The notes below the pieces were generated by a model, which saw only the letters and a program-made list of their open reading frames with translations, was not told where the DNA came from and did not search any database. From NCBI GenBank assembly GCA_002269645.1, contig NIVC01001550.1:62001-126000 (forward strand): DNA of 64,000 nt, in the 5' to 3' direction. The stretch is from Macrostomum lignano (lineage: Eukaryota). Below are positions 1,796 through 49,469 of the stretch, piece by piece; positions within the stretch are counted from its first letter, which is position 1, and the number at the start of each line of letters is the position of its first letter. A program made the position numbers and the translations under genes.

Positions 1796-2339
1796 TCTGT
1801 ATCGGCCCTTAATCTTCACGTATTTCTGAAGAATTCCAATATGCCATTATGAGCTAAGACTGTCGAAAAGAAGCATTAATCCCAAGATGCTGATGATAAC
1901 AGATCAGAGAGATTAAGCGGCAAAGCAAAAAAATACAATTAAAATGAGCCCCGAGCCACTTCAAAGACAGATGCATTCATTGATCCAGCAATATGCAGAA
2001 ATATGGGGCTATTATTTTACGCCTTCAAACGGGATCAGAGATTCGAAAATCCCTCCCAGAAAGCCCCTCCCCCCCAGGCATTCGATCCGCGGCTCCACGG
2101 GGGCGAGGGGACACAAAGAAAATTCTGCTAACATAAATCCTCGCATAAAGATGCCAGACTGCCTCATATCAGTCTGGCAAAAGCAGGGCTCATATTGGCC
2201 GAAGGTATTATCAAAAACAATTTATGAATGGCTTCTCACAGTTGGCAGTAGGCAGCATCATTTCGATGATTTTTATTGATGATTAGGTTGGAATACAGCG
2301 AGGTTAATGAGCTGCAGATACAGACAGTTTGACATTTGG

Positions 2340-2845
2340 GAGACTTACATGCAGACAGGATCAGGGATTTTAGACACGCTTACATACCAACAATCTGGAA
2401 TAAAGGACAAGCTTACATGCCAACAATCTGGAATGAAGGACAGGCTTACATGCCAACAATCTGGAATGAAGGACAGGCTAACATGCCAACAATCTGGAAT
2501 GAAGGACAGGTTAACATGCCAACAATCTGGAATGAAGGACAGGCTTACATGCCAACAATCTGGAATGATCGAAGGACAGGCTTACATGCCAACAATCTGG
2601 AATAAAGGACAGGCTTACATGCCAACAATCTGGAATAAAGGACAGGCTTACATGCCAACAATCTGAAATGAAGGAAAAGCTTACATGCCAACAATCTGGA
2701 ATGAAGGACAGGCTTACATGCCAACAATCTGGAATAAAGGACAGGCTTACATGCCAACAATGTGGAATGATCGAGGGACTGGCTTACATGCCAACAATCT
2801 GGAATGAAGGACAGGCTTACATGCCAACAATCTGGAATGAAGGAA
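2340..2845 (+). repeat. 33 bp minisatellite
   Basis: CTTACATGCCAACAATCTGGAATGAAGGACAGG. Confidence 0.95.
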
Positions 2846-3402
2846 GTCTTACACACAGATAGACACGAAAAGCAACGCAATCCACAAAGTGCAAGCAGGA
2901 TGACGAGGATTTTATCTCAAAACTGTAGCCAAATCCCAAGGCAGATCACTAAAAATCATCTAAACTTGTTGCATTTCGTCCCAAATGCTTTTAAGCTCTG
3001 CTAATTGATGTCGCCCCGAGAGTTGCTACAAATGATGGTCATACAGCTGAACCTTCGCTGATTGAATCGCGAAAGCTTATTGCGCTACTATAAGTAGTAA
3101 TCATCTGATTTATAAACTGTCGTTAATTTCCACTTGCTGCTTTTCTACTCGACGCGATCAAAGAAAAAATGACGAAGCAAAACCTCAAGCCGGCGATATT
3201 TCTTACAATTAAGTAAAGACTCGAAAAACTAAAAGATGACAAAGTGTATTTTATTATCTTCAGAAAAAACTGTTTTTAATAATTTAGAGTAGCCGTAGAA
3301 CATGTACTTGAACATTAGACAGTATGATGACTTTCAACTTTTAAATCGTAATAAAACCGACAAAAATATTAATATCTATTGTGAATTGAAAATTGCTTAA
3401 TT

Positions 3403-3785: not shown

Positions 3786-4349
3786 AGAACAACCAGATTA
3801 CCGATAATCCATTCGAAAATCATGTAATTAAAACATGTTAATATTCAGTGGATCGTTGAAAGAAAATAATTTATAAACAGATATTATCATACATATATCG
3901 AGCGAAATTACGACTACTCCTAAATGATTTGGCTTGGGTAAAATAACAATCATTATTTAGCACACGCTGAAGAAAACGAAAAATGAGCAAATTAATAATT
4001 TAATAATTAATTCGCTTGAAGGACAATTTAAGCTGGGGCGAACACCAAAATCAAAACAACAACAAAAAGTAACTTTTTTTGGGAGGTTGTTTATGAAAGG
4101 CATTTTGAACGGCAAAATATACGGAGGCTATAGCAATGTACTTTTGTACACACACAGACACACACAAGCTCGTGCAAGCACAGACCAAATATGACAATAA
4201 TTATTAATACACTGTATGGCGCAATATCTTTGAATGAATACCTGACTGAACAAGCAGAGCTTGCAATGGCAAATGACTTTGTATTTAATAAATAATTAAT
4301 CAAAATATACCTAATTCTTATTGTATGGCTATTTACCGCAATCATTAGC

Positions 4350-5260
4350 TCAGATCACTCATCTGTGACCTCAGCTGACCTCTGTCACATTCACTCATCT
4401 GTGACCTCAGCTGACCTCTGTCACATTCACTCATCTGTGACCTCAGCTGACCCCTGTCACATTCACTCATCTGTGACCTCAGCTGACCCCTGTCACATTC
4501 ACTCATCTGTGGCCTCAGCTGACCTGTCACATTCACTCATCTGTGGCCTCAGCTGACCTGTCACATTCACTCATCTGTGGCCTCAGCTGACCTGTCACAT
4601 TCACTCATCTGTGGCCTCAGCTGACCCCTGTCACATTCACTCATCTGTGACCTCAGCTGACCTCTGTCACATTCACTCATCTGTGACCTCAGCTGACCTC
4701 TGTAACATTCACTCATCTGTGACCTCAGCTGACCTCTGTCACATTCACTCATCTGTGGCCTCAGCTGACCTGTCACATTCACTCATCTGTGACCTCAGCT
4801 GACCCCTGTCACATTCACTCAGGTGACCTCTGTCACATTCACTTATGTGACCTCAGCTGACCCCTGTCACATTCACTCATCTGTGACCTCAGCTGACCCC
4901 TGTCACATTCACTCAGGTGACCTCTGTCACATTCACTCATCTGTGGCCTCAGCTGACCTGTCACATTCACTCATCTGTGACCTCAGCTGACCCCTGTCAT
5001 ATTCACTCAGGTGACCTGTCACATTCACTCATCTGTGACCTCAGCTGACCCCTGTCACATTCACTCAGGTGACCTCTGTCACATTCACTCATCTGTGACT
5101 TCAGCTGACCACTGTCACATTCACTCATCTGTGACCTCAGCTGACCTTTGTCACATTCACTCATCTGTGACCTCAGCTGATCTCTGTCACATTCACTCAT
5201 CTGTGACCTCAGCTGACCTCTGTCACATTCACTCATCTGTGACCTCAGCTGACCCTGACC
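4350..5260 (+). repeat. 34-36 bp minisatellite
   Basis: TCACATTCACTCATCTGTGACCTCAGCTGACCTCTG. Confidence 0.95.
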
Positions 5261-5808
5261 CCTTGGAGTGACCATGCTATAGACAACAAGAATGGATGAA
5301 TAGCTAAAACGGCAAATACTGCATCGAATAAAATTTCACCAAAGCACACACGACAGCCAATAGTGGCAATTTCTTCTCCAAAAATATTTACAATTAACAA
5401 ATAAAATAATTAGTTAATTATCTTTAAGTCCGTTCATTCGCGAACCGACACGACTGGCAAAAGATAGAATCAGTGACAGTTAATTAGCAAATGTTAATTA
5501 GATTAGCTCATTATAAAGACTGAAAGCAGAAACTTGTCTGCAAATCGCATTACTAAAGCAGGACAACTGGCTGAACAAAAGCAAGGGAAACGCAACAACC
5601 AAGTTTTTTTAAAGTATGCATTATTTATATAGATTTTTTGGATGACTATATCTTTTTTTCAAGAAAAAACATACGCAAATAAAATGTACAAGCTATTATC
5701 AGTTGAAATTTGTTGCTGTCAATCAATCAATAAATCAAAGCAAAGCAGAAAATGATTAATCAAAAACCAGAAGCCAGATTTGCAATCAGAATCAGGCAAA
5801 CAGACACC

Positions 5809-8800
5809 TCAGCCCGTCGGGGCGCTAGTGGCATAATTGGCCAGCGGGGGGTTGCTGGCGCCCGCCTTGGCTGGGGCGGCGGCGGCGGCGGCGGCTGGCG
5901 ACGCGCCGGCAGCGACGGCACCTTCTGATTCGCTCAGACAGCGAGAGTTGCTGCTCCGCTTGCGCACAAAGAATCCATGCGGAGGGACGAACTGCAGAGG
6001 ATCAGGGTAGGGTGGGGTGTACAGCGACCCTGACTCGTTAATCGTCAGACCAATTTTGGTGCACAAGACCCAAATTTACACGGCTTAGCACGGAATCAAA
6101 CCAGGGGGTGGTGGCGCGAGAGCCAGACACGTTCACCGCTGAGCTGCTCCGCCCCCGCATGCAAAGGCAGGAAATTACACAGGGCATTGGGATAGCAGGG
6201 GATAACACAGATAGTCGGAGGATTGTGACACATGATTATGGTAGGGATTAGCACACAGATGATTAGGAATCAATTGATTGGGATGGATTAGCACACAAGG
6301 AACTCAGAAGAGGATTAACGAACAAGTGTTTAGGAAAGTAAATTTAGCGCAAAGATGATTAGGAACGGATTAGCACACAACGGTTAAGGAAGGGGATTAG
6401 CACACAACGGATTAGGAAGGGGGATTAGCACACAACGGATTAGGGAGTGGGATTAGCACACAACGGATTAGGGAGTGGGATTAGCACACAACGGATTAGG
6501 AAGGGGGATTAGCACACAACGGATTAGGGAGTGGGATTAGCACACAACGGTTAAGGAAGGGGGATTAGCACACAACGGATTAGGGAGTGGGATTAGCACA
6601 CAACGGATAGGGAGTGGGATTAGCACACAACGGATTAGGAAGGAGGATTAGCACACAACGGATTAGGGAGTGGGATTAGCACACAACGGATAGGGAGTGG
6701 GATTAGCACACAACGGATAGGGAGTGGGATTAGCACACAACGGATTAGGAAGGAGGATTAGCACACAACGGATTAGGGAGTGGGATTAGCACACAACGGA
6801 TAGGGAGTGGGATTAGCACACAACGGATAGGGAGTGGGATTAGCACACAACGGATTAGGGAGGGGGATTAGCACACAACGGATAGGGAGTGGGATTAGCA
6901 CACAACGGATAGGGAGTGGGATTAGCACACAACGGATTAGGGAGCTAGGGAATTAGCACACAATGGATTAGGAAGGGGATTAGCACACAATGGATTAGGG
7001 AGCTAGGGAATTAGCACACAACGGATTAGGGAGTGGGATTAGCACACAACGGATTAGGGAGCTAGGGAATTAGCACACAATGGATTAGGAAGGGGATTAG
7101 CACACAATGGATTAGGGAGCTAGGGAATTAGCACACAACGGATTAGGAAGGGGGATTAGCACACAATGGATTAGGGAGTGGGATTAGCACACAATGGATT
7201 AGGGAGCTAGGGAATTAGCACACAACGGATTAGGGAGGGGATTAGCACAGATGATTTGGGTGCAGAACAGTAAGTATAGTACAGAAACGCAGCAGAGCAG
7301 ACTCACATTTTCGCTGCGAAAGTCCTCAACCCGGGTGTACTTGGTGAGCGCCTCGCGCAGCACAGGATGAATGTCTAGCCCGGCTGGGTCAATGGTAGAA
7401 TAGCGGAACAGGGCCCAGAATTTCTCAAGGCCGTACAGATTTCCAGCCCGATAATCGGCCTGGGTGACCTCGTTGAAGTCGCGGAACAGGTCCTTGCGGA
7501 AGCGGCGCTCCAGTCCGTAGCTGTAGAAGCGGAACAGGCACTCGAGTCCGTAGCGATGCCCGTGCTCAGAGTCCTCCAGCGCTAGCCGTTTAAACTCGTT
7601 GTACATTTTCCAATTGAAATTGTCGCGCAGAAAGAACGACCAGAAACGGAATAGAGTGTTCATCTCCTGGGACTGGCCGGGGCCTTCGCGCTCGCGGTCT
7701 GCGATTGAGCGATAGCGTTGCGTTCTCATTTTGCTTGGGACTATGGACATCAGGTTCACTGGACTCGAATCACAGATTATGGTGCTAAACTTCAGATTAT
7801 GGACCTCAGAGCCTCAGGAGCTGAACCTTCAGATTATGAACTTCAAAGCCTCAGGAGCTGAACCATTAGATTATGGACTTCAGGGTCTCAGGAGCTGAAT
7901 CTTCAGGTCATGGACTTCAGGGTCTCAGGAGATGAACGTTCAGGTCATGGACTTCAGGGTCTCAGGAGATGAATGCTCAGGTCATGGACTTCAGGGTCTC
8001 AGGAGCTGAATCTTCAGGTCATGGACTTTAGGGTCTCAGGAGCTGAACCTTCAGATTATAGACTTCAGGGTCTCAGGAGCTGAACCTTCAGGTCATGGAA
8101 TTCAGAACCTCAGGAGCTGAACCTTCACATTATGGACTTGAGGGGCTCAGGAGGCGAACTTCAGAATATGGACATTTAGATTCATGGGGGCAGCCTACTA
8201 TAGTCAAGCACTTAATTAAGGAAATGAAAATTATCGTACCCTGCAAGCACCGCCTGTGGTAATGATTGTAGTCGACAAAATTGAATCCATGCTCTTGCAG
8301 CAGAGACTGCGACGGATGCGAAAATGCCATGCCAGATTGATGAGGCAGAGAGCCTGGCATGTTGCTGGGCAGGCTGGATGACAGCGAGTACTCGCTGCGG
8401 GTTAAAGTTGACAGCTTTTAGCGATTGAAATTTATGGGTAGTTTGGCGATTTCTCTGGGGCAGTTCAGGTGTGAATCTGTGGCCAGTTCAGGTGTGAATC
8501 TGTGGCCAGTTCAGGTGTGAATCTGTGGCCAGTTCAGGTGTGAATCTGTGGCCAGTTCAGGTGTGAATCTGTGGCCAGTTCAGGTGTGAATCTGTGGCCA
8601 GTTCAGGTGTGAATCTGTGGCCAGTTCAGGTGTGATTCTGGAGGCAGTTTAGAGATGATTCTAGGGGCAGTTCAGGGTGATTCTGGTGACAGTTCAGGAG
8701 TGATTCTGGAAACAGTTCAGGAGTGATTCTGGAAACAGTTCAGGAGTGATTCTGGAGGCAGTTTAGAGATGATTCTAGGGGCAGTTCAGGAGTGATTATG

Positions 8801-11800
8801 GAAACAGTTCAGGGGTGATTCTGGAAACAGTTCAGGAGTGATTCTGGAAACAGTTCAGGGGTGATTCTGGGGACAGTTCAGGGGTGATTCTGGAAACAGT
8901 TAAGGGGTGATTCTGAGGACAGTTTAGGGGTGATTCTGAGGGCAGTTCAGGGGTGATTCTGGGGACAGTTCAGGGGTGATTCTGGTGACAGTTCAGGGGT
9001 GATTCTGAGGGCAGTTCAGGGGTGATTCTGGGGACAGTTCAGGGATGATTCTGAGGGCAGTTCAGGGGTGATTCTGGTGACAGTTCAGGGGTGATTCTGA
9101 GGGCAGTTCAGGGTGATTCTGGTGACAGTTCAGGGGCAATTCTGAGAGCACGATCCTCACCCCAGAAACTCACGATTCTCACCCCAGAATCTCACGATTC
9201 TCACCCCAGAAACTCACGATTCTCACTCCAGAATCTCACGATTCTCACCCCAGAAACTCACGATTCTTACCCCTAGAATCTCACGATTCTCACTCCAGAA
9301 TCTCACGATTCTCACCCCAGAAACTCACGATTCTTACCCCCAGAATCTCACGATTCTTACCCCCAGAATCTCACGATTCTTACCCCCAGAATCTCACGAT
9401 TCTTACCCCCAGAATCTCACGATTCTCACCCCAGAACAAAAAGTCGCTGATAATTGCTGAAAAGAACAAAAAATCGCTCAGTTATTTAAAATCGCCCAGC
9501 GATTAAAATTCGCTGGGGTGACAACACTGAATCTGAGGGCAGTTCAGGGGCAATTCTGTGAACAGTTCAGGGGCGGTTCTGAGGGCAGCTCAGGGTCTAT
9601 ATCGGGGAAGTTCGATGGCGATAATCAGGGTAACTCAGGGGTACCACTGAAGTGGTAGTTCAGGTGATTCTACTGGTAACCATAGAAAGTACAAGGAATG
9701 ACTTTAAAAGCTTCATCAGCTACCTAAAGCTGCTACTAGTTGACGAAGTCCTGGACCGGGCGCGGTGCTCGCGAATGTCGAATAGATAACCGACACTCTG
9801 CTCAGCCAGTTGCTGCTGTTGCTGCTGCTGCTGATACCGACCGCCGCCTCCGCCTCCATAGGCGGGGTAAAACCTGCCGTACGGCGCCGCGCCGCCTTCG
9901 CCTCCGCCGCCGTCCTCGACACCGGCTGGCATCCCAGACGATGGCGCCGACTCCTCGGGCACCAGCCGGAGCCGCCTGCTATCACCGCCGCCACAGCCGT
10001 GACGCAGAATGGCCGCCTGATAGTCGGCGATGCCGTCACCAAGCCGCCTGGCCAGCTCGCGGGTCATCCGGCCGCCGCCGCCGCCTCCTCGCTGGTGCGG
10101 CGGACCCCGGCCCCGGCGGGACCCGGAGGCGGGCGCCACCACCAGCAGCCGGTTGATGTCGGCTTCGGACACCTCGTCCTCTGTAGTGGAGATCGCCCGC
10201 ACTCGGCTCCTGACTGGCTGCTGTTGCGCGGGCGCCGCCGGCTGCTGCGAATCGACAGGCTGGTCGGAGTCGAACTGGAAGTCGAAATCGTCCTGCTGAC
10301 TGGGCCGCCTGACGGACTGGCCGTCTTCTGTGATATTTTTATCGATTAGTTCGATTTATTCTCCACCAGTGTGTCTACGCGTGACTACTCTTATAACAGT
10401 AGTAGAATTTGCATATGCAAAGATAAAAGCGCGTAAATTTCGCAAAATTTATACTACTAACGTCTGGTCGCAAACAGTAGTGCAAGAATATATTTTCAGG
10501 GGGGTCAATGGGGGTCAGTTGACCCTACCCAACTATTTGAGGCTGATGACCCATTTTTCAATGCCTCATTCATTAAATTTTCAATCTGTTCGAAGTCAGC
10601 TTAGCCAAATATGAGCCGCAAGAATTTTTACAACGGCAGCTCAAAGCTAGATTAACCAACTTCTAAATAAGTTTTACTATTCGATGCCATGGAATGTGCA
10701 GTTAGTACTATTGGATTTTTTAACTAGCGACTGCACAATGGAAGCATCGTATTTAACATTAACTTGACTATGTATTAAACTGTAGGAGCAAGTCAAGCAA
10801 AAAACAGTTGAGTCGCTGTTTTTTTTAAGTGAACAGCGGCTTTTTTAAACTCCCAAGCAGCACTGTCCGATGCCATGGAATGTGCGGTCAGTATTATCAC
10901 AAGTGTTACTGGCGACCGCACAATGGAAGCATCGACCACACCCCAGGCCCTTTCAGTGACCTGTCCCTACCCTCCATCAGATTCTTCAGCGGCCTGCCGC
11001 TACCCTCTATCAGATCCTTCAGCGGCCTGCCCTACTCTCCATCAGATTCTTCAGCGGCCTGCCCTACCCTCTATCAGATCCTTCAGCGGCCTGCCCCTAT
11101 CCTCCAACAGATACTTCAGCGGCCTGCCGCTACCCTCCATCAGATCCTTCAGCGGCCTGCCCCTATCCTCCAACAGATCCTTCAGCGGCCTGCCCTACCC
11201 TCCAACAGGTACTTCAGCGGCCTGCCCCTATCTTCTCTTCTTAGAGATTCTTCAGCAGCTTTCTATACGCGTAGAACTTTATTCAAACGCAAAAGCAGCA
11301 ATAATCAGCAGTTTTATAGATAGGGCCTGTGTGCACCCTGGCGCACTTTAAGCGACATTGTCACACTACCGGAGGGAGGAATTACTGCCCATTCCGCCGA
11401 CTCCTCTGAGCAGGCACACAAGCGCGCGGATACGTACGCAGTCAAACGCACAGGCACACACTCACACAGGAGTGTACAGCGGCCTATACTTTTTTATCGC
11501 TAGGCATGTACACTTCACTGTGCCTTGGGGGGTTGGTCCTCAAGGCCGTTAATTGCACAAGCAGAGCCAAGCCGAGATTCCAATTTATGTGATTGCACTG
11601 TGGAATCGAGCCTGGGCCACTGGCACATCTGAGCGCCGTGCCAGACCACTGGGCTACGGCACCCCAGCAATGAGCAAAAGCAACATACTCACTAGAAGCA
11701 GCCGCTGGCTCGGCAGTTGGCACAAACTCCGGCGCGTCAATATTTAGCTGAGCATCGTCATCCTGCTGAGCCTTGACTTTGGCCGCGTCGATTGGCCAAC

Positions 11801-14086
11801 GCTTCGGATCGTCTCGCCGACGGACCCGATCCCTCTCGGGGCTGAGCTCCAGACTGTCGCTTTTCTCAACGGCGACTGCGACATCCTCAGGATTGCCGTT
11901 GCATAAAAAATTAACCCGATTGAAGCCGGCCAGAGTCTGCACGCCTACGTAGCCTTCGCTGTCCATGATGCTGCGCAGGAACAGGTCGTGATTAAGATTC
12001 TCGTCCGAGAAATAGAACTCAATTTGATGCCGGATCTGCTCCAATACGGCGTCGCACACGGCGTCGCTGTCGAAGTTCTCGGGAAAATAGTGCAGGCCGT
12101 TCACTATGACAGAGCGAGTGCCAGTGACCGGGTCTACGGCTTCTGACATTGGCGCCGTGTCTGGCGTTGGACCGCCGCTGGCGTACATCAGCGCCAGGCC
12201 CTCTGCAGTCAGGGATGGGGGCTAGTCTTGGAGTCTGAATAGGGGATAATCTGAGTCTGAATAGGGGATAATCTGAGTCTGAATAGGGCATCATCTGAGT
12301 CTGAATAGGGGATCATCTGAGTCTGAATAGGGGATCATCTGAGTCTGAATAGGGGATCATCTGAGTCTGCATAGGAGATCATCTTAGAATATCAATAGGG
12401 GATCATCTTACGAGAATATCAATAGGAATCGTCTTAGAATCTGGGGTCTAATCCTAGAATCCTGGGGTCTAATCTTAGAATCCTGGGGTCTAATCTTAGA
12501 ATCCTGAAGTCTAATCCTAGAATCCTGGAGTCTAATCCTAGAATCCTGGAGTCTAATCCTAGAATCCTGGAGTCTAATCCTAGAATCCTGGAGTCTAATC
12601 CTAGAATCCTGGAGTCTAATCTTAGAATCCTGGGGTCTAATCTTAGAATCCTGGGGTCTAATCTTAGAATCCTGAAGTCTAATCCTAGAATCCTGGAGTC
12701 TAATCCTAGAATCCTGGGGTCTAATCCTAGAATCCTGGAGTCTAATCTTAGAATCCTGGGGTCTAATCTTAGAATCCTGGGGTCTAATCTTAGAATTCTG
12801 GGGTCTAATCTTAGAATCCTGGGATCTAATCTTAGAATCCTGAAGTCTAATCTTAAAACTACACGCGGGTGATGCCCCAGGCCTCACCTGGCAATCTCGG
12901 ATCAACAGCAGTAGAAGCCGGATTAAAACCGGGCGCAGCAGGAGTCCCGCCGGCTACAGCTGCCGCAGGCGGCACACCAACAGGAAACGGTGGTGGAGGC
13001 GGAATTGATGGATTGTCGTAATACGGCTGGTGGTAGAACCCACCGCCCGGCCCTCCAGCTGCTGGCAGGGCGGCGCCTGGAGTAGAGAATATGGCAAATA
13101 AAAACTTGGAGCGTGAGCAATTTTTTCAAATTGATTAATCCAGGCATCATTTCTCATATCGTAAGGTATCTTTTCTTATATTAAAATCCAAGATAAAATT
13201 CAGTAAGAAGCCATTTCTAATTTATCAACATGCCATTTTCCGTTCAGTAAGGTGCCATTTCCGTTCAGTAAGAAGCCATTTCCTATTCAATAAGGTGCCA
13301 TTTTCCGTTCAGTAAGGTGCCATTTCCCATTCAGCAAGATGCCATTTCCGTTCAATAAGGTGCCATTTCCGTTCAGTAAGAAGCCATTTCCTATTCAACA
13401 AGGTGCCATTTTCCGTTCAGTAAGGTGCCATTTCCTATTCAATAAGGTGCCATTTTCCGTTCAGTAAGGTGCCATTTCCTATTCAATAAGGTGCCATTTT
13501 CCGTTCAGTAAGGTGCCATTTCCTATTCAATAAGGTGCCATTTTCCGTTCAGTAAGGTGCCATTTCCTATTCAATAAGGTGCCATTTTCCGTTCAGTAAG
13601 GTGCCATTTCCTATTCAATAAGGTGCCATTTTCCGTTCAGTGAGGTGCCATTTCCTATTCAATAAGGTGCCATTTTCCGTTCAGTAAGGTGCCATTTCCC
13701 ATTCAGCAAGATGCCATTTTCCGTTCAGTAAGGTGCCATTTCCCATTCAGTAAGGTGCCATTTCCCATTCAGCAAGGTGTCATATGAAAAAAATGAGCCA
13801 CAGTCCTTGCATCTGATTGCTGTCACTAATTAATAGAATCCCCAAAATTGGCCAATTAGCACACACAGCACTATTACTCACCCATCTCTGTGGGCCAGTT
13901 TGGCTGCATAAGGCCACCTCCCGGCTCCATAATTGGCTGCTGTGGCATCAGCCGGCCCCCGCCGCGGGGAAATCGTTGAAAAGGCCTGGTTCGACCTGCG
14001 CCGCCTCCGCCACGCTTGCTAGAGGTATTATTGGCTGGCTCAGGACCGCGCTGCACTGGACCATCAATGCCTTGGTGCTGCTCCAT
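5809..14086 (-). CDS. LARP1: La-related protein 1 (La motif, PAM2-like motif, DM15 repeats); 7 coding exons, 745 aa
   Basis: Exons (minus strand): 14086-13882, 13076-12888, 12202-11693, 10327-9724, 8394-8240, 7698-7307, 5991-5809. All junctions are GT-AG with matching phases; total 2238 nt. La motif [17 protein letters not shown], motif [12 protein letters not shown]15 region [18 protein letters not shown]...[15 protein letters not shown]...YGLEKFW. An in-frame TAA lies just upstream of ATG 14086. Confidence 0.95.
6190..7250 (+). repeat. About 29 bp G-rich minisatellite in the last LARP1 intron
   Basis: GGATTAGCACACAACGGATTAGGGAGTG. Confidence 0.95.
7780..8180 (+). repeat. 37 bp minisatellite in a LARP1 intron
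   Basis: GGACTTCAGGGTCTCAGGAGCTGAACCTTCAGGTCAT. Confidence 0.92.
8460..9435. repeat. Two abutting 21-23 bp arrays in a LARP1 intron
   Basis: CAGTTCAGG(G)GTGATTCTGG type at 8460-9150, then GATTCTCACCCCAGAATCTCAC type at 9160-9435. Confidence 0.92.
10584..10750 (-). ncRNA. Putative box H/ACA snoRNA B, in the same LARP1 intron
   Basis: Hairpin 1 is homologous to that of snoRNA A with the identical pocket. A perfect H box AUAGUA (10680-10675) sits 14 nt after the upper stem. Hairpin 2 has GAAGUUGGUU/AGCUGACUUC and GAGCUGC/GCGGCUC stems, then ACA (10589-10587) plus 3 nt. Confidence 0.8.
10778..10936 (-). ncRNA. Putative box H/ACA snoRNA A, in LARP1 intron 10328-11692, same sense as host
   Basis: Hairpin 1 is UCGAUGC-[UUCCAU]-UGUGCGGUC...ACCGCACA-[UUCCAUG]-GCAUCGG. 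It is followed 14 nt after the upper stem by ACAGUG (10866-10861), a variant H box or an ACA box. A second hairpin (GGGAG/CUCCU lower stem) ends at ACA 10783-10781. Confidence 0.7.
10950..11250 (+). repeat. 33 bp minisatellite in a LARP1 intron
   Basis: CAGATCCTTCAGCGGCCTGCCCTACCCTC... units. Confidence 0.9.
12230..12860 (+). repeat. 21-22 bp minisatellites in a LARP1 intron
   Basis: CTGAGTCTGAATAGGGGATCAT units, then AGAATCCTGGAGTCTAATCCT units. Confidence 0.95.
13205..13780 (+). repeat. 21-22 bp minisatellite in a LARP1 intron
   Basis: GGTGCCATTTTCCGTTCAGTAA alternating with GGTGCCATTTCCTATTCAATAA. Confidence 0.95.
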
Positions 14087-29658: not shown

Positions 29659-32512
29659 ATGGCTGACAACTTAGCAGTCCAAGATATAGAGAAATTGGAT
29701 GTGAGCAAGCTCACCCCGCTAACTCCCGAGGTGATTAGCCGTCAGGCCACAATCAATATCGGCACCATTGGTCACGTGGCCCACGGCAAGACCACAGTGG
29801 TGAAGGCCATCTCCGGCGTGCACACAATCCGGCACAAGAACGAACTGGTCCGCAACATCACCATTAAGCTGGGCTACGCTAATGCAAAAATCTACCGCTG
29901 CGACAATCAGCTGTGCCCTAAGCCCGGCTGCTATCGGAGCAAAGGCTCCGCACATCCGGACGACTTTCCCTGCGACCGGCCCGGCTGTTCCGGCCGGTTC
30001 CGGGTGCAACGCCACGTCTCCTTTGTTGACTGTCCCGGCCACGACATCCTCATGGCTACCATGCTGAACGGAGCCGCCGTTATGGACGCCGCTTTGCTGC
30101 TAATCGCTGGCAACGAGGCCTGTCCGCAGCCTCAGACCTCCGAGCACCTGGCCGCCGTTGAAATTATGCGACTGCGTCATCTGCTGATTTTGCAAAATAA
30201 AATCGATCTGATTAAAGAGCAGGAGGCCCAGAATCAGTATGAGGCTATTTTGGACTTCATCAAGGGCACCGTGGCTGACGGCAGCCCCGTGGTGCCGATC
30301 TCCGCCCAGCTTGGCTACAACATCGACGTGGTGTGCGAGTACATCTGCCGCCACGTGCCCGTGCCGCTGCGCGATTTCACTAGCGACCCCAGGCTTATCG
30401 TTATTCGCAGTTTCGATGTTAATAAGCCAGGTTGGTTAGTTTCTTATCTGATTGCTGATTCTTTCACAGCCTCCCAGATCCTCAGTTGCTGGGCCACCCT
30501 CTCAGATCCTCAGTTGCTGGGCCAGCCTCCCAGATCCTCAGTTGCTGGGCCACCCTCTCAGATCCTCAGTTGCTGGGCCAGCCTCCCAGATCCTCAGTTG
30601 CTTGGCCAGCCTCCCAAATCCTCAGTTGCTTGGCCAGCCTCCCAGATCCTCAGTTGCTTGGCCAGACTCCCAGATCCTCAGTTGCTGAGCCAGCCTCCCA
30701 GATCCTCAGTTGCTGAGCCAGCCTCCCAGATCCTCAGTTGCTGGGCCAGCCTCTCAGATCCTCAGTTGCTGAACCAGACTTCCAGATCCTCAGTTGCTGA
30801 ACCAGACTTCCAGATCCTCAGTTGCTGAACCAGACTTCCAGATCCTCAGTTGCTGGGCCAGACTCCCAGACTCACGAGATCCCTCCACATCTTGGGGAAT
30901 ACTTTTACATTAGCTATCAGTTTTTAATTTTTTATGCTTTAAAATAATTAGAAATGTTCATCATATCCTTCCCGGACTGAGTAGTTAGCCAAGCGCATGC
31001 TAATATAAAATCATTTACGTCAATCCAGGCTCGGAAGTTGACGATTTAAAAGGTGGCGTAGCCGGCGGCTCCGTCCTTCGCGGCGTCCTTCGCGTTGGCC
31101 AGGAGATCGAAGTCCGGCCGGGCATCATCTCCAAGGGCGCCGAGGGCCGCATGACCTGCCGGCCGATCCTGTCCCGAATCGTGTCGCTGTACACCGAGCG
31201 CAACGATTTGCAGTTCGCCGTTCCCGGCGGCCTGATCGGAGTTGGCACCATGGTTGATCCCACTCTGTGCCGGGCCGATCGCATGATTGGCATGGTTCTA
31301 GGCGCTGTTGGCACTTTGCCAAGCATCTACATCGAACTGGAGATCAGCTTCTTTCTGTTGCGCCGGCTGCTTGGCGTTCGAACCGAGGGTGACAAGAAAG
31401 GCGCCAAGGTTTGTTGGGGTGGTCTGTGACAGGGTTGCCAACAACAGGTTGATTTGCCTGAACCCAGGATTGTTTAGGTTTATTTAGCTTTGTTTACCAG
31501 CACCTGGATTTTTAGGTTTATTTAGTTTGGGCTACCAGCACCTAGATTTTTAGGTTTATTTAGTTTGGGTAACCAGTACCTATATTTTTAGGTTTATTTA
31601 GTTTGGGTAACCAGTACCTATATTTTTAGGTTTATTTAGTTTGGGCTTCCAGCACCTGGATTTTTAGGTTGATTTAGTTTGGGTAACCAGTACCTAGATT
31701 TTTAGGTTTCTTTTGGGTTACCAGCACTTAGATTTTTTAGGTTTATTTAGTTTGGGTTACCATCACCCATTTTCAAAGTTTTACTTAGGTTGGCTTACCA
31801 GTAATCAGTTTGTTTAGGTTTATTTAGGTTGTATTGCCAGTGACCAATATTTTTAGGTTTATTTAGGTTGTATTGCCAGTGACCAATATTTTTAGGTTTA
31901 TTTTGGTTGTATTGCCAGTGACCAATATTTTTAGGTTTATTTTGGTTGTATTGCCAGTGACCAATATTTTTAGGTTTATTTAGGTTGTATTGCCAGTGAC
32001 CAATATTTTAGGTTTATTTTGGTTGTATTGCCAGTGACCAATATTTTTAGGTTTATTTAGGTTGTATTGCCAGTGACCAATATTTTTAGGTTTATTTAGG
32101 TTGTATTGCTAGTGACGAATATTTTTAGGTTTTGTTACCAGAACTCAGATTTTTTAGGTTTATTTAGGTTAGGTTACTAGCACCTAGAGAGTTTAGATTT
32201 AGTTAGGTTTTTTGACTTAGGTGTCCATGTCCATCCACTGTGATTTTTAACGCTTATCTGCCCCCCCCTAAAAAATGAATCGCAGGTGCAAAAGCTGGCC
32301 AAGGCGGAGCTGCTGATGGTGAACATTGGCTCCCTGTCCACCGTTGCCGGGTGATTGCAGTTAAAAACGACCTGGCCCGCATCGCGCTCAACCAGCCAGT
32401 GTGCACTGAGATTGGCGAGAAGATCGCCCTGTCGCGCCGCGTTGACAAGCACTGGAGGCTGATCGGCTGGGGTCAGATTAGAAAGGGCTCGCCTATTAAA
32501 GTTGTGGAATGA
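29659..32512 (+). CDS. EIF2S3: Translation initiation factor 2 subunit gamma; about 459 aa if one missing base in exon 3 is restored
   Basis: Exons 29659-30430, 31029-31408, 32286-32512. Motifs: [62 protein letters not shown]. The reading frame shifts at about 32343. Confidence 0.96.
30470..30870 (+). repeat. 28 bp minisatellite in eIF2-gamma intron 1
   Basis: CAGATCCTCAGTTGCTGGGCCAGCCTCC. Confidence 0.95.
31480..32175 (+). repeat. About 37-39 bp T-rich minisatellite in eIF2-gamma intron 2
   Basis: TTTTTAGGTTTATTTAGGTTGTATTGCCAGTGACCAATA and relatives. Confidence 0.93.
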
Positions 32513-32654
32513 ATTACCTGACTGACCCTGTGTGTTGTGTTTCCATTTGTGGGCTGGGAGTCCGGGGTAGGCATTCAGCTTAATGGAGTGAGCGCCTTGG
32601 CACACCGCTGCTGCTGCTCTGTCTCCCAATTTTTTTGCAGTCATTAACGGTTTT

Positions 32655-32926
32655 GCCTTTTCGGGGTCTACCCTCTCTCTCTCCCTCTCTCCCTCTCTCT
32701 CCCTCTCCCTCTCTCCCTGTGTATCTCTCTCCTCTCTCTCCGTCTTTCTTTCTCCCTTTCCCTCTCCCTTTCCCTCTCCCTCTCTTCATCTTTCTCCCCC
32801 CGTCTCCCTCTCTCTCTCTCTCCTCTCCTCTCTCCCTCTCTTCCTCTCTCTCTCTCGTCTCTCTCTCTCTCTCTCTCTCCCTCTCCCTCTCTCCCTCTCT
32901 TCCTCTCTCCTCTCTCTCTCCTCTCT

Positions 32927-33023
<97 letters not shown>

Positions 33024-33045
33024 CATCTCTCTCTCTCTCTCCGTC

Positions 33046-33080
<35 letters not shown>

Positions 33081-33125
33081 ATCTTCCTCTTCTCTCCGTT
33101 TCTCTCTCTCTCTCTCTCTCTCTCC

Positions 33126-33161
<36 letters not shown>

Positions 33162-33205
33162 CTCTCTCCCTCTCTCTCTCCCTCTCCCTGTCTCTGTCTC
33201 TCTTG
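32655..33205 (+). repeat. (CT)n-rich polypyrimidine tract
   Basis: About 550 nt almost entirely C/T. Confidence 0.97.
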
Positions 33206-33834
33206 TCTTTAACATCCTAGCTATGATTTTCCAACCAGACATATGTAATCATCTTGAAAGCAATTATTTAAAGCAAGACTTATTTGAAAGCTGATTCTCT
33301 TTAGGAGCAACGCCGGCTTGCAAATCGTCGATTTGTTGTTGTTATTCTCTTTAACCCAGGCAGTCTGTCTTCTTGGTTCAAATTGATAAATTAAATCCAC
33401 TGTTTCCCTCTCGAGATTCACACTCGGTGTTTGACAAAACTGGAAAATGATGTTTAAATAAAGAAGCTGTTCTGACGCAGAGCGAGAGAGGATGGGTGAA
33501 AGAGGCGGCTCTGTCTCTATCTCCCTTCCTGATGTCTGAGAGCTGTTTAAAGAATAAACAACAATTTATTTCGTGTTCGTTGCTGCGTTCTTTGTCGCCA
33601 AATTTCTTTTAAGTCAACTTCAAAGATAATCGGACTCTGGCTAATGCTGCTGCGCTTGGCTAGCGAGCAATTAAGTTCAATTAGATGCTGTTTATGCAGC
33701 TGTCGCAGTCGTTTCGAAATCTGTATTGCAAATTATTTTTTACTTTCTAATTGCTCCCAGACCAATTTACAAGATTGCCAGTAAAAAATTTTTTATGAAA
33801 CGATAATTGCCCTTCTGTTTCTTGTGCTATTTAA

Positions 33835-36223: not shown

Positions 36224-36649
36224 GGGAGCATGAGATTTGCCCGCCGAGATTTTTCCCGCCGAGGTTTGCCCGCAATGTTTATTCCTGCAGCGCATTTGGC
36301 CACGGCAGCTAGATTCTGTCTGCATTGCCCCCCATGCTTAGTACCGCGTAAGTCTTAATAAAGAGATTTGGGGACATGGCATTTGCATGAATTAATAGCT
36401 CACCGATGTACTCGTACCCCTGCATGTGTATAGAACACCTACAAGAAAATATGAATTTTATATGCAGCTACTATCAAAACGTTTTGATCGGCTGTAAATC
36501 TCTTTATTGAGACTTACTAAGCATTGGGGAGGCAATGCAGACAGAATCTGCCGCGTGGCTGAATGCACTGCAGGAAAAAAGCATTGCGGGCAAACCTCGG
36601 TGGGAAAAACTCGGCGGGCAATTCGTCTGCGGGCAATTCTCATGGACCC
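36224..36649. mobile_element. MITE with 8-bp TSD CTTTATTC
   Basis: TSD at 36216-36223 and 36650-36657. TIRs GGG(A/T)(G/C)CATGAGA.TTGCCCGC with about 60 bp of inverted similarity. Confidence 0.82.
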
Positions 36650-36679
36650 CTTTATTCTGCGTTTTCCTGACTAAGTTCC

Positions 36680-37370
36680 TTTCTCTCTCTATCTCTCTCC
36701 CTTCTCTCTCTATCTCTCCCCTCCCTTCTCTCTCTATCTCTCTCCCTTCTCTCTCTATCTCTCTCCCTTCTCTCTCTATCTCTCCCCTCCCTTCTCTCTC
36801 TATCTCTCTCCCTTCTCTCTCTATCTCTCCCCTCCCTTCTCTCTCTATCTCTCTCCCTTCTCTCTCTATCTCTCCCCTCCCTTCTCTCTCTATCTCTCCC
36901 CTCCCTTCTCTCTCTATCTCTCTCCTCCCTTCTCTCTCTATCTCTCTCCTCCCTTCTCTCTCATCTCTCCCCTCCCTTCTCACTCTTCCCTTCTCTCTCC
37001 TCCCTTCTCTCTCCTCCCTTCTCTCTCCTCCCTTCTCTCTCTTCCCTTCTCTCTCTTCCCTTCTCTCTCTATCTCTCTCCTCCCTTGTCTCTCCTCCCTT
37101 CTCTCTCCTCCCTTCTCTCTCCCTTGTCTCTCCTCCCTTCTCTCTCCTCCCTTGTCTCTCCTCCCTTCTCTCTCCTCCCTTGTCTCTCCTCCCTTCTCTC
37201 ACTATTTTCTCCCCATCTCTCCTTTCTCGGTCTCTCCTTTCTTCTCTCTACGTCTCTCCCTTCTCTCCCTTCTCTTTCATTCTCTTTCCCATATTTCTCG
37301 CTTCTTTACTGTTTGCCCTCACATTGTATCCTTTTCCCTCTTCATCTCACCGCTCTCCCGTCTACCTGGT
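36680..37370 (+). repeat. C/T-rich low-complexity tract
   Basis: CTCTCTATCTCTCTCCCTT-type units. Confidence 0.95.
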
Positions 37371-37829
37371 TCCCGCGGACGCGAGAGCACATGCTGGCAC
37401 GCACGTGGCCTATTTATCCTCATCGGATTCGCACCGACCAGCTGCAAATTTGCTTCCACACGGTGCCGCTAGGCCTATAAGCTGTACGAGTATTCCGATT
37501 CCCTTTCATCACCATCCGACTTTCTAGTATAGAAAAATTCATGTGCCCACGGAGCCGTGACGAACTGCGGGGCAACTCACTATTAATCTATAATCCCGCC
37601 CCCATCCAATGTACTCTATAATTATAAGAAGGCTAAAAATACTGAAGTATAAGTTAGAAAGATCACATGCACCATTGAACACTTGCATTAGGCTGTCTCG
37701 TGTGAGCGTAGGCGTTGTATATTTGTCATAACAGAATCTTTCTTAAAATTAAATTTAGTAGACGCTTCTTTAGGATAGACGGCTGGGCAGAAACATTGTC
37801 AAGAAGGAATTTCTTCCCAAAATTTAATG

Positions 37830-38700: not shown

Positions 38701-39197
38701 GAGTCTGGGGATAAATATAGGTGAAGAAATACTCAGTGGAGGGAATTTATTCCCCGATTAAGAACTCTACGTGAGAAACTCGACCAGTTTGTTTTCCAGT
38801 TTCCAGGAAAGACTGTCCCTCTTCATTTTTAAAACGCTCCCTGGCTAAAGCGCGTGCAGTGCCCTTGTTTCAATTCTTCGCTCAAGGCTTGCCCGGTTGC
38901 AGCTGGTTTTTCCTGGAATCGAGCCGCGGATCCTCCTCTAGATCAGCCTCTTGAGATTCCGTCGAACCCTCTTTACTAGCAAATTTGCCCATGTCATGAT
39001 GAACTCTTCAGCCCACGCCCAGCCTCTGCTGGTGGAGCGCGTCCCCCACCCGGGCAGGGTCCGACGCAGGCGAGCGGAAGTAATTTGTATCTGCATGTTC
39101 CAATTCGAAAGTAATAGGAAAAATTTATTGTTATTACTCGTAGTCTGTTTGACCGACACACCCTTCTTACTGATCTGAATCAGGGTTCATGATTCAT

Positions 39198-39487
39198 CCC
39201 AAACTGCACCCCAAACTGCACGCCAAATTGCACCCCAAACTGCACCCCAAACTGCACCCCAAACTGCACCCCAAACTGCACCCCAAACTGCACCTCAAAG
39301 AGCACGCCAAACTGCACGCCAAACTGCACCCCGAACTGCACCCCAAACTGCACCCCAAACTGCACCCCAAACTGCACCCCAAACTGCACTCCAAACTGCA
39401 CCCCAAACTGCACCCCAAACTGCACCCCAAACTGCACCCCAAACTGCACTCCAAACTGCACCCCAAACTGCACGCCAAACTGCACCC
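39198..39487 (+). repeat. 12 bp minisatellite
   Basis: CCAAACTGCACC. Confidence 0.96.
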
Positions 39488-40249
39488 AGTTGACTAATGC
39501 CATAATTATATTTTGCGATTAAAACTGTTGTGAAACCCCTATTGCAGCCGTCTCTGCATTTTGCCTGAAATTTTCCCAACTCTAGCGATTAAAACTCCGC
39601 TCTAATCGCTGTTTATCGGCACTTGTCTTTTGAGGTAAATTCCGGAAATTGCTGGGGATGCGTCTTCAAAGAGCAGAAAAGCGAAGTTTAAAAAGTGTTG
39701 AAGAAAAATTGCTCCCGGCGGCAGCTGCGCTAACGGCAAAGCCTGGCTGCTCAAAAAAGCAGGAAAACCTGTTTGACCAACCAGACAAGCCAACCCCAAG
39801 ACTCCAACTGCTCCGGCCTCTGTCCGCCGATGCACCGTAAGGATGTGGCGGATAAACAAGCCAATTAAATGGGCGGCCGGGGGGCTGCAGCGCACCGAAG
39901 TCAGCTGCTGTAGCTGGCAGACCAAGCCAAGACGCGGTGCAGCCGTCACCGCCAGCTATGATAGTCATAAATCATGCCCATGCAAGAGTGCGAAGCACTT
40001 CATCGGATGCATGACTAGCATTGTTGCAGCTATATTTTCAATCGCTGCTGTATGGGGGGGCTTATGCAGGTAAACCAACACTGCTAATTTAAAAAAGACT
40101 GATTGAACTGCGTGAAGAGTGGTGTCCCTGATACAAGCACAAAATTAAAGTGGCATCAGTGGCGTCCTGACGCGGACAATAAAAAAGTGACGCCGAAAAA
40201 CAAGGAACCACCGACACAGATAAATAAATGGCACTACTATCACCGAAAC

Positions 40250-41030
40250 ACAAAATAGTGGCACTCCTGACACCAAAGCAAAATAATGGCACTCCTGAAA
40301 CCAAAGCAAAATAATGGCACTCCTGAAACCAAAGCAAAATAATGGCACTCCTGAAACCAAAGCAAAATAATGGCACTCCTGAAACCAAAGCAAAATAATG
40401 GCACTCCTGACACCAAAACAAAATGGTGGCACTCCTGACACCAAAACAAAATAATGGCACTCCTGACACCAAAACAAAATGGTGGCACTCCTGACACCAA
40501 AGCAAAATAATGGCACTCCTGACACCAAAACAAAATGGTGGCACTCCTGAAACCAAAACAAAATAATGGCACTCCTGACACCAAAACAAAATGGTGGCAC
40601 TCCTGACACCAAAGCAAAATAGTGGCACTCCTGACACCAAAACAAAATAGTGGCACTCCTGACACCAAAACAAAATAGTGGCACTCCTGACACCAAAACA
40701 AAATAGTGGCACTCCTGACACCAAAACAAAATAATGGCACTCCTGACACCAAAACTAAATAGTGGCACTCCTGACACCAAAACTAAATAGTGGCACTCCT
40801 GACACCAAAACAAAATAATGGCACTCCTGACACCAAAACTAAACAGTGGCACTCCTGATACCAAAACTAAATAATGGCACTCCTGACGCTGATACAAAAG
40901 TGGCACTCCTGCCATTGAAAAGTGACACCAAATTTCGACACAGACACAGTGGCACTCCTGACGATGACACAGTGGCGCTCCTGGCGATGACACAAAAGTG
41001 GCACTCCTGACACAGACAAAAGATGACACC
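40250..41030 (+). repeat. 28 bp minisatellite
   Basis: GTGGCACTCCTGACACCAAAACAAAATA. Confidence 0.95.
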
Positions 41031-48955: not shown

Positions 48956-49469
48956 CCTATTTTAACCTTTGGGGCTTGTTTGATCTCGAACGGTTTTGTA
49001 ACATACCTACTTTGGCCTCCTTGTTACTTAGATTGGCTTGGTGATCCAGACTAGATATTATATTTAAAGCCTTTAAGTTACTAGATAATTAACAAAGCTA
49101 GCTAAAACTAAAGCCACCTTTATTATTTCTGTCTGTTATCTATAGACTATAAGGTTAGATTCTTTTTTAGGGAATTTATGCTACTAAGCAAATTATATTA
49201 TATTATATTTAATAAAAAGTGTATAATGTCTTTCTGTATCTGAGCAATGCATTATGTTGTCTTTAGTGGAAGTAGAATCTGCTTTCAAAGGCTCTACTCT
49301 AATGCTATATTAAGGTAAGCATTTTGCTAATAAATATTCATATATATAGTTTCAACTTTCAATATGTTAAATTGAAATGAATATTCACTTAGAAGAAAGT
49401 TGCTTTCTAGTTATGGTATAATAGTTTTTTATTGTTTTAATGTAGTAAGTATTTTATTAAATAACTGAT

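What the first reader, a model, noticed from the sequence alone, without database searches (positions are those of the whole stretch)
10584..10936. Tandem pair of H/ACA snoRNA-like genes in a LARP1 intron, predicted to guide 18S rRNA pseudouridylation
Seen: a ~68-nt hairpin occurs twice on the LARP1 sense strand. Both copies keep an identical internal loop (5' UUCCAU, 3' UUCCAUG), their stems still pair despite substitutions, and their apical loops are fully diverged. Each pocket is exactly 14 nt from a box: AUAGUA (perfect ANANNA) in copy B and ACAGUG in copy A. Each is followed by a second hairpin and a terminal ACA, giving 160-167 nt RNAs. Established: H/ACA guides leave the target U and the next base unpaired 14-16 nt from the box. 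Inference: the pocket reads a target CAUGGAA-U-N-AUGGAA with 7+6 bp, matching the conserved animal 18S motif GCAUGGAAUAAUGGAAUAGG. That motif is recalled from memory; as I recall, the human counterpart carries Psi863. The host, LARP1, regulates TOP/ribosomal-protein mRNAs, which would link ribosome modification to its regulator.
Basis: partly seen in the sequence, partly recalled or inferred. Interest (0 to 1): 0.9.

Follow-up and report, generated by a model that had tools for sequence, protein, structure and literature searches.

The report
Two intronic H/ACA snoRNA genes in LARP1
An intron of an animal LARP1 gene carries two neighbouring copies of an ordinary pseudouridylation guide RNA (box H/ACA snoRNA), both aimed at the 18S rRNA uridine that is pseudouridine 863 in humans. 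This is a credible but routine unannotated gene pair.

Summary
On the minus strand, 10936-10778 (copy A) and 10750-10584 (copy B) each fold as hairpin, hinge, hairpin, ACA tail.

- **Position:** both lie in the sense orientation in a 1365-nt GT-AG intron (11692-10328) of a LARP1 orthologue.
- **Conservation:** the 35 nt that form the lower stem, both pocket strands and the base of the upper stem are identical in A and B. The apical region is 64% identical and the 3' half about 42-53%.
- **Target:** each pocket gives 7+6 Watson-Crick pairs with CAUGGAA-UA-AUGGAA. The pocket top lies 14 nt from the hinge box, which is AUAGUA in B and the imperfect ACAGUG in A.
- **Specificity:** a scan of the whole 64-kb window against every uridine of a eukaryotic rDNA unit returned only these two hairpins. 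Shuffled sequence returned about none.
- **Target motif:** it sits in eukaryotic 18S at the position of human U863, a known pseudouridine guided by SNORA24.

Limits: no Rfam family matches, the second hairpins have no convincing target, and there is no U609 pocket. It is therefore a functional analogue of SNORA24, not a demonstrable member. The species' own 18S, RNA accumulation and cross-species conservation could not be tested. The proposed LARP1-ribosome link is speculation. Verdict: new member of a known kind, modest interest.

The parts
10778..10936 (-). Copy A: predicted box H/ACA snoRNA, about 159 nt, made of 5' guide hairpin, hinge, 3' hairpin and ACA tail
   Evidence: Sequence; folds; target scan
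10868..10934 (-). Copy A 5' guide hairpin. Lower stem 10934-10929 / 10873-10868. Pocket UUCCAU 10928-10923 and UUCCAUG 10880-10874. Upper stem 10922-10914 / 10889-10881 (9 bp).
10861..10866 (-). Copy A hinge box ACAGUG, an imperfect H box (ANANNG), 14 nt after the upper stem
10781..10783 (-). Copy A ACA box, directly after the 3' hairpin (about 10855-10784). The predicted 3' end is 10778.
10584..10750 (-). Copy B: predicted box H/ACA snoRNA, about 167 nt, with a canonical H box and ACA box
10682..10749 (-). Copy B 5' guide hairpin. Lower stem 10749-10744 / 10687-10682. Pocket UUCCAU 10743-10738 and UUCCAUG 10694-10688. Upper stem 10737-10730 / 10702-10695 (8 bp).
10675..10680 (-). Copy B H box AUAGUA (perfect ANANNA), 14 nt after the upper stem
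10587..10589 (-). Copy B ACA box, 2 nt after the 3' hairpin (10663-10592). The predicted 3' end is 10584.
10328..11692 (-). Host intron of the LARP1 orthologue (1365 nt). Donor GT at 11692-11691 (GTGAGT), acceptor AG at 10329-10328. The join is phase 1 and in frame. An in-frame stop at 10358-10356 prevents the downstream exon from extending further 5'.
   Evidence: read directly from the sequence
11693..12188 (-). Upstream LARP1 exon, containing at least this stretch: La domain and a PAM2-like motif
   Evidence: Pfam La 7.1e-18; PAM2 0.0022, weak
7199..7759 (-). Downstream LARP1 exon encoding the DM15 / LARP1 HEAT region. It fixes the host gene's identity and strand.
   Evidence: Pfam PF21071 4.5e-57; human LARP1 PDB chains 3.8e-53

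Best explanation
These are two tandem paralogous box H/ACA snoRNA genes, 185 nt apart start to start and separated by a 27-nt spacer. They lie in the sense orientation inside one intron of a LARP1 orthologue.

Inferred from the established H/ACA pathway:
- The RNAs are transcribed as part of the LARP1 pre-mRNA.
- They are bound co-transcriptionally by the dyskerin/Cbf5-Nop10-Nhp2 core, with Gar1 joining later.
- They are released from the spliced intron by trimming up to the protected RNP ends.

Shown in sequence:
- In each copy the internal loop of the 5' hairpin pairs with 18S rRNA. The 3' pocket strand UUCCAUG pairs with CAUGGAA. The 5' pocket strand UUCCAU pairs with AUGGAA.
- This leaves a U and the following A unpaired at the base of the upper stem, 14-15 nt from the hinge box. 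That is the geometry in which the synthase converts the U to pseudouridine.
- The targeted U is the equivalent of human 18S U863.

Copy B has all canonical elements. Copy A has an off-consensus H box (ACAGUG) and may be less efficient. The 3' hairpins probably serve only as the second structural and protein-binding half. No credible target was found for them.
For: 1. Architecture: both copies fold as hairpin-hinge-hairpin-ACA, more stably than shuffles.
2. Guide: 13/13 Watson-Crick pairs to cauggaaUAauggaa in two independent eukaryotic 18S sequences, at a box distance of 14 nt.
3. Specificity: 607 bipartite 6+6 matches to any rRNA uridine exist in the 64-kb window on both strands. Only these two hairpins have the flanking stems, and both have an ANA-type box at 14 nt. 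Shuffles gave 0.4 and 0. Looser pairings of 5+5, 4+6, 6+4 and 4+7 again returned only these two, and 7+4 returned none.
4. Selection pattern between paralogues: 35/35 identical in stems plus pocket, 21/33 in the apical part, 48/114 in the rest and 4/16 in the 5' flank. Fisher test of 0/35 against 12/33 differences gives p = 5e-5. One G-C to A-U compensatory pair is present.
5. Target: it is real 18S. The motif occurs in at least 120 metagenome contigs. Two of them were verified as eukaryotic SSU rRNA. The Rfam consensus reads GCAUGGaAUaAuagaau.
6. Known modification: the same U is pseudouridine 863 in human 18S, guided by SNORA24 (PMC6776443). The SCARLET splint in that paper starts at U followed by AAUGGAAUAGGACC. 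PMC5733568 agrees, and the numbering was cross-checked.
7. Context: sense strand of an intron of a translation-related host gene.
Against: - No Rfam family matches at gathering score anywhere in the window. None matches on the minus strand of this region even at E <= 10.
- Copy A's H box is ACAGUG, not ANANNA.
- In copy A's minimum-energy fold the ACA is partly paired, and the fold changes with the flanks chosen.
- Two sequences give almost no covariation power: one compensated pair and one broken pair.
- Neither 3' hairpin has a canonical pocket 14-16 nt from the ACA.
- Two H/ACA units 27 nt apart in one intron need a cut between them, or else yield a joint RNA.
- There is no expression data, no orthologous locus and no 18S from the same species.
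Confidence: 0.8

Rival explanations
1. Only copy B is a working snoRNA. Copy A is a decaying tandem duplicate whose H box has mutated (A to G at position 6), so it assembles poorly with the H/ACA proteins and does not accumulate.
For: The H box of A is ACAGUG against AUAGUA in B. A's 3' hairpin fold is unstable to the choice of flanks, and its ACA abuts or enters the stem. A's 3' half is heavily rearranged relative to B.
Against: A keeps all 35 guide and stem positions identical to B, while the surrounding sequence has diverged to about 42-64% identity. A also has the better upper stem, 9 bp against 8 bp plus a mismatch. That is hard to explain without continuing selection on A's guide.
Confidence: 0.2
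2. The two units are not separated. They accumulate as one RNA of about 353 nt with four hairpins. This would be a composite double H/ACA RNA, or a very short snoRNA-ended sno-lncRNA, because exonucleases stop at the outer RNP ends.
For: Both units lie in the same intron with only a 27-nt AU-rich spacer. The review PMC11028025 states that two snoRNAs in one intron can yield snoRNA-ended RNAs such as SLERT. From memory, not checked here: tandem H/ACA composite RNAs such as U93/SCARNA13 exist.
Against: Intronic snoRNA clusters that give separate snoRNAs are also a recognised arrangement (PMC11028025). Each unit has its own ACA box. No CAB box (UGAG) is visible in the terminal loops (inspection). 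Nothing in the sequence distinguishes the two outcomes.
Confidence: 0.1
3. This is a non-functional tandem duplication or transposon-derived hairpin (MITE-like) in an intron rich in repeats. Its match to 18S would be coincidental.
For: The window is full of minisatellites, and a 33-nt array (10952-11230) ends 16 nt upstream of copy A. There is no Rfam match and no cross-species evidence.
Against: - Only two copies exist in 64 kb, both sense and adjacent. A covariance model with filters off finds no third copy.
- No terminal inverted repeats bracket the units.
- A perfect 13-bp bipartite match to one of about 1400 rRNA uridines has a rough chance of 2e-5 per pocket (my estimate). Here it also comes with correct stems, a 14-nt box distance, a second hairpin and an ACA, in both copies.
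- The conservation is concentrated exactly on the guide.
Confidence: 0.05

Closest known systems
Human SNORA24 (ACA24; Rfam SNORA24)
   Same: It is a box H/ACA snoRNA that guides pseudouridylation of the same 18S uridine, U863, in the GGAA-U-AAUGGAA motif at the base of ES6 (PMC6776443, PMC5733568). It is also intron-encoded.
   Different: - No sequence or structure match to the Rfam model, even at E <= 10.
- SNORA24's second pocket guides U609, and no U609 pocket exists here.
- The pocket here reads CAUGGAA, the general eukaryotic consensus, not the human CUAGGAA (oligonucleotides in PMC6776443).
- The host is LARP1. From memory, the human host is the non-coding SNHG8.
- The gene is tandemly duplicated here.
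Intronic snoRNA clusters of animals (several snoRNAs in one intron)
   Same: Two guide RNAs sit in the sense orientation within a single host intron. The organisation is described in the review PMC11028025.
   Different: Vertebrate snoRNAs are mostly one per intron. Here the two are paralogues with the same guide, only 27 nt apart.
snoRNA-ended RNAs (sno-lncRNAs, e.g. SLERT) and composite double H/ACA RNAs (e.g. U93/SCARNA13, from memory)
   Same: Two H/ACA units in one intron can protect both ends of a joint RNA (PMC11028025).
   Different: The spacer here is only 27 nt. No CAB box is seen. There is no evidence that a joint RNA accumulates.
SNORA28 and SNORD98, the guides for the neighbouring human 18S sites pseudouridine 866 and Gm867
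   Same: They act on the same heavily modified single-stranded 18S segment (PMC5733568).
   Different: They target other nucleotides. The pocket here fits only the U863 register.

Membership tests
Box H/ACA snoRNA (class) | Hairpin-hinge-hairpin-tail secondary structure | tested here: met
   Both copies fold this way, with z = -2.7 and -3.6. Copy A's fold is sensitive to the flanks chosen.
Box H/ACA snoRNA (class) | H box ANANNA in the single-stranded hinge | tested here: inconclusive
   Copy B has AUAGUA, which meets the consensus. Copy A has ACAGUG, which fails at position 6.
Box H/ACA snoRNA (class) | ACA box directly after the 3' hairpin, 3 nt from the mature 3' end | tested here: inconclusive
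   An ACA is present right after each 3' hairpin (10783-10781 and 10589-10587). The mature 3' end cannot be read from DNA.
Box H/ACA snoRNA (class) | Internal-loop pocket with bipartite complementarity to a target, leaving U-N unpaired 14-16 nt upstream of the H or ACA box | tested here: met
   7+6 Watson-Crick pairs to 18S and a box 14 nt after the upper stem, in both copies. These were the only such hairpins in the window.
Box H/ACA snoRNA (class) | Accumulates as a stable RNA bound by dyskerin, Nop10, Nhp2 and Gar1 | not testable with these tools
   No expression or RIP data are available.
Box H/ACA snoRNA (class) | Conservation, with covariation, in related species | not testable with these tools
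   - No close relative is in the protein collection (the best DM15 hit is 71% identical).
- Exact look-ups of window ORFs failed.
- The contigs fetched for the best LARP1 hits looked transcript-like or held only the DM15 end.
- A metagenome scan for the hairpin found 0 matches.
- Only the paralogue comparison is available.
SNORA24 family (Rfam) | Match to the family covariance model | tested here: not met
   No hit at gathering score. No minus-strand hit at E <= 10.
SNORA24 family (Rfam) | Guide pocket for the 18S U863 equivalent | tested here: met
   with the target position confirmed from PMC6776443.
SNORA24 family (Rfam) | Second guide pocket for the 18S U609 equivalent (530 loop) | tested here: not met
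   The target scan of both 3' hairpins lists no hit at GGGCAAG-U-C-UGGUGCC.
MITE / dispersed hairpin repeat | Many dispersed copies in both orientations, with terminal inverted repeats and target-site duplications | tested here: not met
   Only two adjacent sense copies in 64 kb and no bracketing inverted repeats. The genome-wide copy number could not be tested.

The most novel reading that the evidence does not exclude
The pair is not just a duplicated guide. One possibility is that it matures as a single four-hairpin double H/ACA RNA of about 350 nt. Another is that its residence in LARP1 makes the level of this 18S pseudouridine track LARP1 transcription. That would be a physical coupling between the regulator of TOP/ribosomal-protein mRNAs and a site-specific ribosome modification. 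Neither possibility is excluded by the sequence, and neither has any direct support.
Probability: 0.1. Interest if true: 0.5.

Novelty: new member of a known kind. Interest (0 to 1): 0.3.

Why it matters
If confirmed, it adds an unannotated guide RNA pair to this animal's snoRNA set. It implies that pseudouridylation of the U863-equivalent site at the base of 18S ES6 is not confined to vertebrates, even though the guide shows no detectable similarity to vertebrate SNORA24. This illustrates how a target site can be conserved while the guide gene and its host turn over.

It also names LARP1 as a snoRNA host. I found no paper in the held library that describes this, but that search is not exhaustive. 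It fits the known bias of snoRNA hosts towards TOP and translation-related genes (PMC8266598 and the Smith & Steitz 1998 paper it cites).

It does not open a long-standing question. It is good annotation rather than a surprise.

Tried and rejected
- **Rfam:** the whole window at gathering score gave 0 hits. The region at E <= 10 gave only plus-strand chance hits to bacterial sRNA families.
- **Metagenome scan for the hairpin** (TGCTTCCATTG-N30-60-CATTCCATGGCA): 0 hits.
- **Orthologous LARP1 introns:**
  - The La-exon protein search found nothing.
  - The DM15 search found 895 LARP1 fragments, none closer than 71% identity.
  - Three contigs were fetched. Two looked like transcripts without introns, and one held only the DM15 end.
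  - Exact look-ups of two window ORFs found no record.
- **Targets for the 3' hairpins:**
  - The best hit was an 11-bp match (one G.U) of B's 3' hairpin to the 18S U34 equivalent. From memory, that is a pseudouridine site in human 18S.
  - It needs a 4-bp upper stem with two G.U pairs and contradicts the stable 8-bp stem of the fold.
  - With the stable stem, the pocket-to-ACA distance is 22 nt.
  - I judged this hit to be noise level.
- **Box C/D guides in the window:** one 11-nt chance hit inside an eIF2-gamma exon.
- **Third diverged copy:** a covariance model with filters off found none.
- **MITE features:** no bracketing inverted repeats.
- **tRNA-like stretch in the same intron:** no ARAGORN or Rfam hit.
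- **Drosophila snoRNA names in the literature:** uninformative.
Full report
**What is in the sequence**

Read on the minus strand, the region holds two units 185 nt apart.

Copy A starts with this hairpin:
- lower stem CGAUGC (10934-10929);
- pocket strand UUCCAU (10928-10923);
- upper stem UGUGCGGUC (10922-10914);
- apical part;
- upper stem return GACCGCACA (10889-10881);
- pocket strand UUCCAUG (10880-10874);
- lower stem return GCAUCG (10873-10868);
- G, then ACAGUG (10866-10861).

Copy B has the same layout:
- lower stem 10749-10744 and 10687-10682;
- pocket strands 10743-10738 and 10694-10688;
- upper stem UGUGCAGU / ACUGCACA;
- A, then AUAGUA (10680-10675).

In both copies exactly 14 nt separate the last upper-stem base from the hinge box.

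Each hairpin is followed by a second hairpin (A about 10855-10784, B 10663-10592) and an ACA (A 10783-10781, B 10589-10587). The predicted RNAs are about 159 nt (10936-10778) and 167 nt (10750-10584), with a 27-nt AU-rich spacer between them.

ViennaRNA returns hairpin-hinge-hairpin-tail for both, with z = -2.7 and -3.6 against dinucleotide shuffles. Copy A's fold changes with the flanks given, and it can pair part of its ACA.

**Is it more than chance?**

- The two 17- and 18-nt blocks flanking the pocket each occur exactly twice in the 64 kb, against 0.18 and 0.05 expected.
- The bipartite pocket pattern also occurs only twice, against 0.15 expected.
- A covariance model of the 5' hairpin, run with filters off, finds no third copy. 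Apart from the two copies, the only low-E hits are the reverse strands of those copies, and the rest score 14 bits or less.

I wrote a small snoGPS-like scan. It tests every uridine of a complete eukaryotic rDNA unit (18S, 5.8S and 28S of locus L060) against both strands of the whole window.
- 607 places have a 6+6 bipartite match 20-70 nt apart.
- Only two of them have an upper stem of at least 5 bp and a lower stem of at least 4 bp. They are copies A and B.
- Both have an A-N-A box at 14 nt.
- Shuffled windows gave 0.4 and 0.
- Loosening the pairing to 5+5, 4+6, 6+4 or 4+7 again returned only these two, and 7+4 returned none.

**Evidence of selection from the paralogue comparison**

| Segment | Identical positions |
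|---|---|
| 5' flank | 4/16 |
| First block (lower stem, pocket, base of upper stem) | 17/17 |
| Apical part | 21/33 |
| Second block | 18/18 |
| Hinge, 3' hairpin and tail | 48/114 (53% in an optimal pairwise alignment) |

- The alignment of the 3' half scores better than 288 of 300 shuffles, so the whole unit was duplicated and then diverged.
- Zero differences in 35 guide and stem positions against 12 in 33 apical positions gives Fisher p = 5e-5.
- The two conserved blocks are separated by a diverged stretch. This argues for purifying selection on the guide in both copies rather than one gene-conversion tract.
- Covariation proper is minimal with two sequences.

**The target**

In H/ACA guides the 3' pocket strand pairs with target sequence 5' of the uridine, and the 5' pocket strand pairs 3' of U-N. 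This is established knowledge of the family.

UUCCAUG and UUCCAU therefore specify CAUGGAA-U-A-AUGGAA, which is 13 Watson-Crick pairs. My scan recovered exactly this site in two independent 18S sequences (positions 829 and 871) as the top consistent hit for both copies.

- GCATGGAATAATGGAATAGGAC occurs in at least 120 metagenome contigs.
- Two of these carry Rfam-verified eukaryotic SSU rRNA with the motif inside it.
- The Rfam eukaryotic SSU consensus there reads GCAUGGaAUaAuagaauAggac.
- The 5' half of the target is therefore nearly universal. The G in AUGGAA is lineage-variable, with A in the consensus.

For the human equivalent I used two sources.
- PMC6776443 shows experimentally that SNORA24 guides pseudouridines 609 and 863 of human 18S.
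- The SCARLET splint in that paper begins at the U followed by AAUGGAAUAGGACC, and its chimera oligonucleotide gives the upstream context GCAGCUAGGAA.
- U863 is therefore exactly the U this pocket leaves unpaired.
- PMC5733568 independently assigns pseudouridine 863 to SNORA24, pseudouridine 866 to SNORA28 and Gm867 to SNORD98.

I also wrote out a human 18S sequence from memory. It had the right length (1869 nt) and the right base at 15 known modified positions, and it placed U863 in cuaggaaUaauggaa. That check is memory-based and is offered only as a cross-check.

**Host gene and intron**

- The minus strand encodes a LARP1 orthologue. It has a La domain and a weak PAM2 motif in the ORF 11484-12188, and the LARP1 HEAT/DM15 region in 7199-7759. 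The DM15 region matches human LARP1 structures at 3.8e-53.
- The La exon ends at 11693, before GTGAGT.
- The next exon starts at 10327, after CACAG.
- The split codon A|AA keeps the frame into ...[23 protein letters not shown]...[10 protein letters not shown].
- An in-frame stop at 10358-10356 prevents that exon from reaching further upstream (read by hand).
- Both units are therefore intronic and in the sense orientation, 256 nt upstream of the acceptor.

**What it is not shown to be**

- No Rfam family, SNORA24 included, matches.
- Neither 3' hairpin has a pocket for the U609 equivalent, or any convincing pocket 14-16 nt from the ACA.
- I therefore file the pair as box H/ACA snoRNAs that work like the U863 pocket of SNORA24, and not as members of the SNORA24 family.
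- Copy A's hinge box ACAGUG misses the last A of ANANNA. A may be weaker or decaying, although its perfectly kept guide argues against a dead copy.

**Processing**

Two snoRNAs in one intron is a recognised arrangement. It can also give snoRNA-ended joint RNAs (PMC11028025). With a 27-nt spacer, a composite RNA of about 350 nt cannot be excluded from sequence alone.

**The LARP1 angle**

LARP1 binds TOP mRNAs, including many snoRNA host transcripts (PMC8266598), and snoRNA hosts are typically TOP or translation-related genes. A snoRNA inside LARP1 fits that pattern. It is not evidence for a regulatory loop. I found no paper describing LARP1 as a snoRNA host, but that search is limited to the held library.

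**What could not be done**

- The species is not in the protein collection.
- No orthologous intron could be fetched.
- The hairpin is absent from the metagenome collection.
- The species' own 18S, cross-species covariation, genome-wide copy number and expression are therefore untested.

**Verdict**

It is a new member of a known kind.

Noticed in passing
window 10952-11230: A 33-nt minisatellite (8.5 copies, 87% matches; also read as a 65-nt period) ends 16 nt upstream of copy A, inside the same LARP1 intron.
   Followed up: partly
window 11600-11665 (minus strand): A tRNA-like stretch (..GUAGCCCAGUGGUCUGGCACGGCGCUCAGAUGUGCCAGUGGCCCAGGCUCGAUUCC..) lies near the 5' end of the host intron. It may be the head of a tRNA-derived SINE. 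ARAGORN and Rfam (E <= 1) do not call it, and it is single-copy in the window.
   Followed up: partly
window 10592-10663 (minus strand): The 3' hairpin of copy B has an 11-bp bipartite match (one G.U), 14 nt from the ACA, to GCUUG-U-C-UCAAAG at the 5' end of 18S. This is the human U34 equivalent, which from memory is a known pseudouridine. The match needs a weak 4-bp upper stem that conflicts with the stable fold, so I judged it noise level.
   Followed up: partly
window 29659-30828 (+), 50873-54499 (+), 58032-60073 (-): Neighbouring genes. The first is an eIF2-gamma-like GTPase exon: Pfam calls only the GTP_EFTU domain, and the eIF2-gamma name is my reading of the sequence. The others are LETM1 (LETM1_RBD in two exons) and a DEG/ENaC (amiloride-sensitive) sodium channel. 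No snoRNA-like hairpin or box C/D guide was found in them.
   Followed up: partly
window 2300-2900, 4345-5275, 12408-12905, 32580-33294, 36504-37527, 39180-39503, 40089-41029, 49437-50818, 54124-55225, 56051-56701, 62454-63705: The window is unusually rich in long minisatellite and microsatellite arrays. They appear as long repetitive pseudo-ORFs in several frames on both strands. G+C content swings between about 30% and 56% over 2-kb windows.
   Followed up: no
window 11484-12188 (minus strand), residues 147-158 of the ORF: A PAM2-like (PABP-binding) motif follows the La module in the LARP1 exon. The Pfam E-value is 0.0022, below the curated cut-off.
   Followed up: no
loci L029 1855-1898, L087 89-132, L088 817-871: Three of the rDNA-bearing metagenome contigs also contain TTCCAT-N-TTCCATG on the strand opposite the 18S motif. 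This is about what chance allows for roughly 500 kb. I did not inspect them.
   Followed up: no
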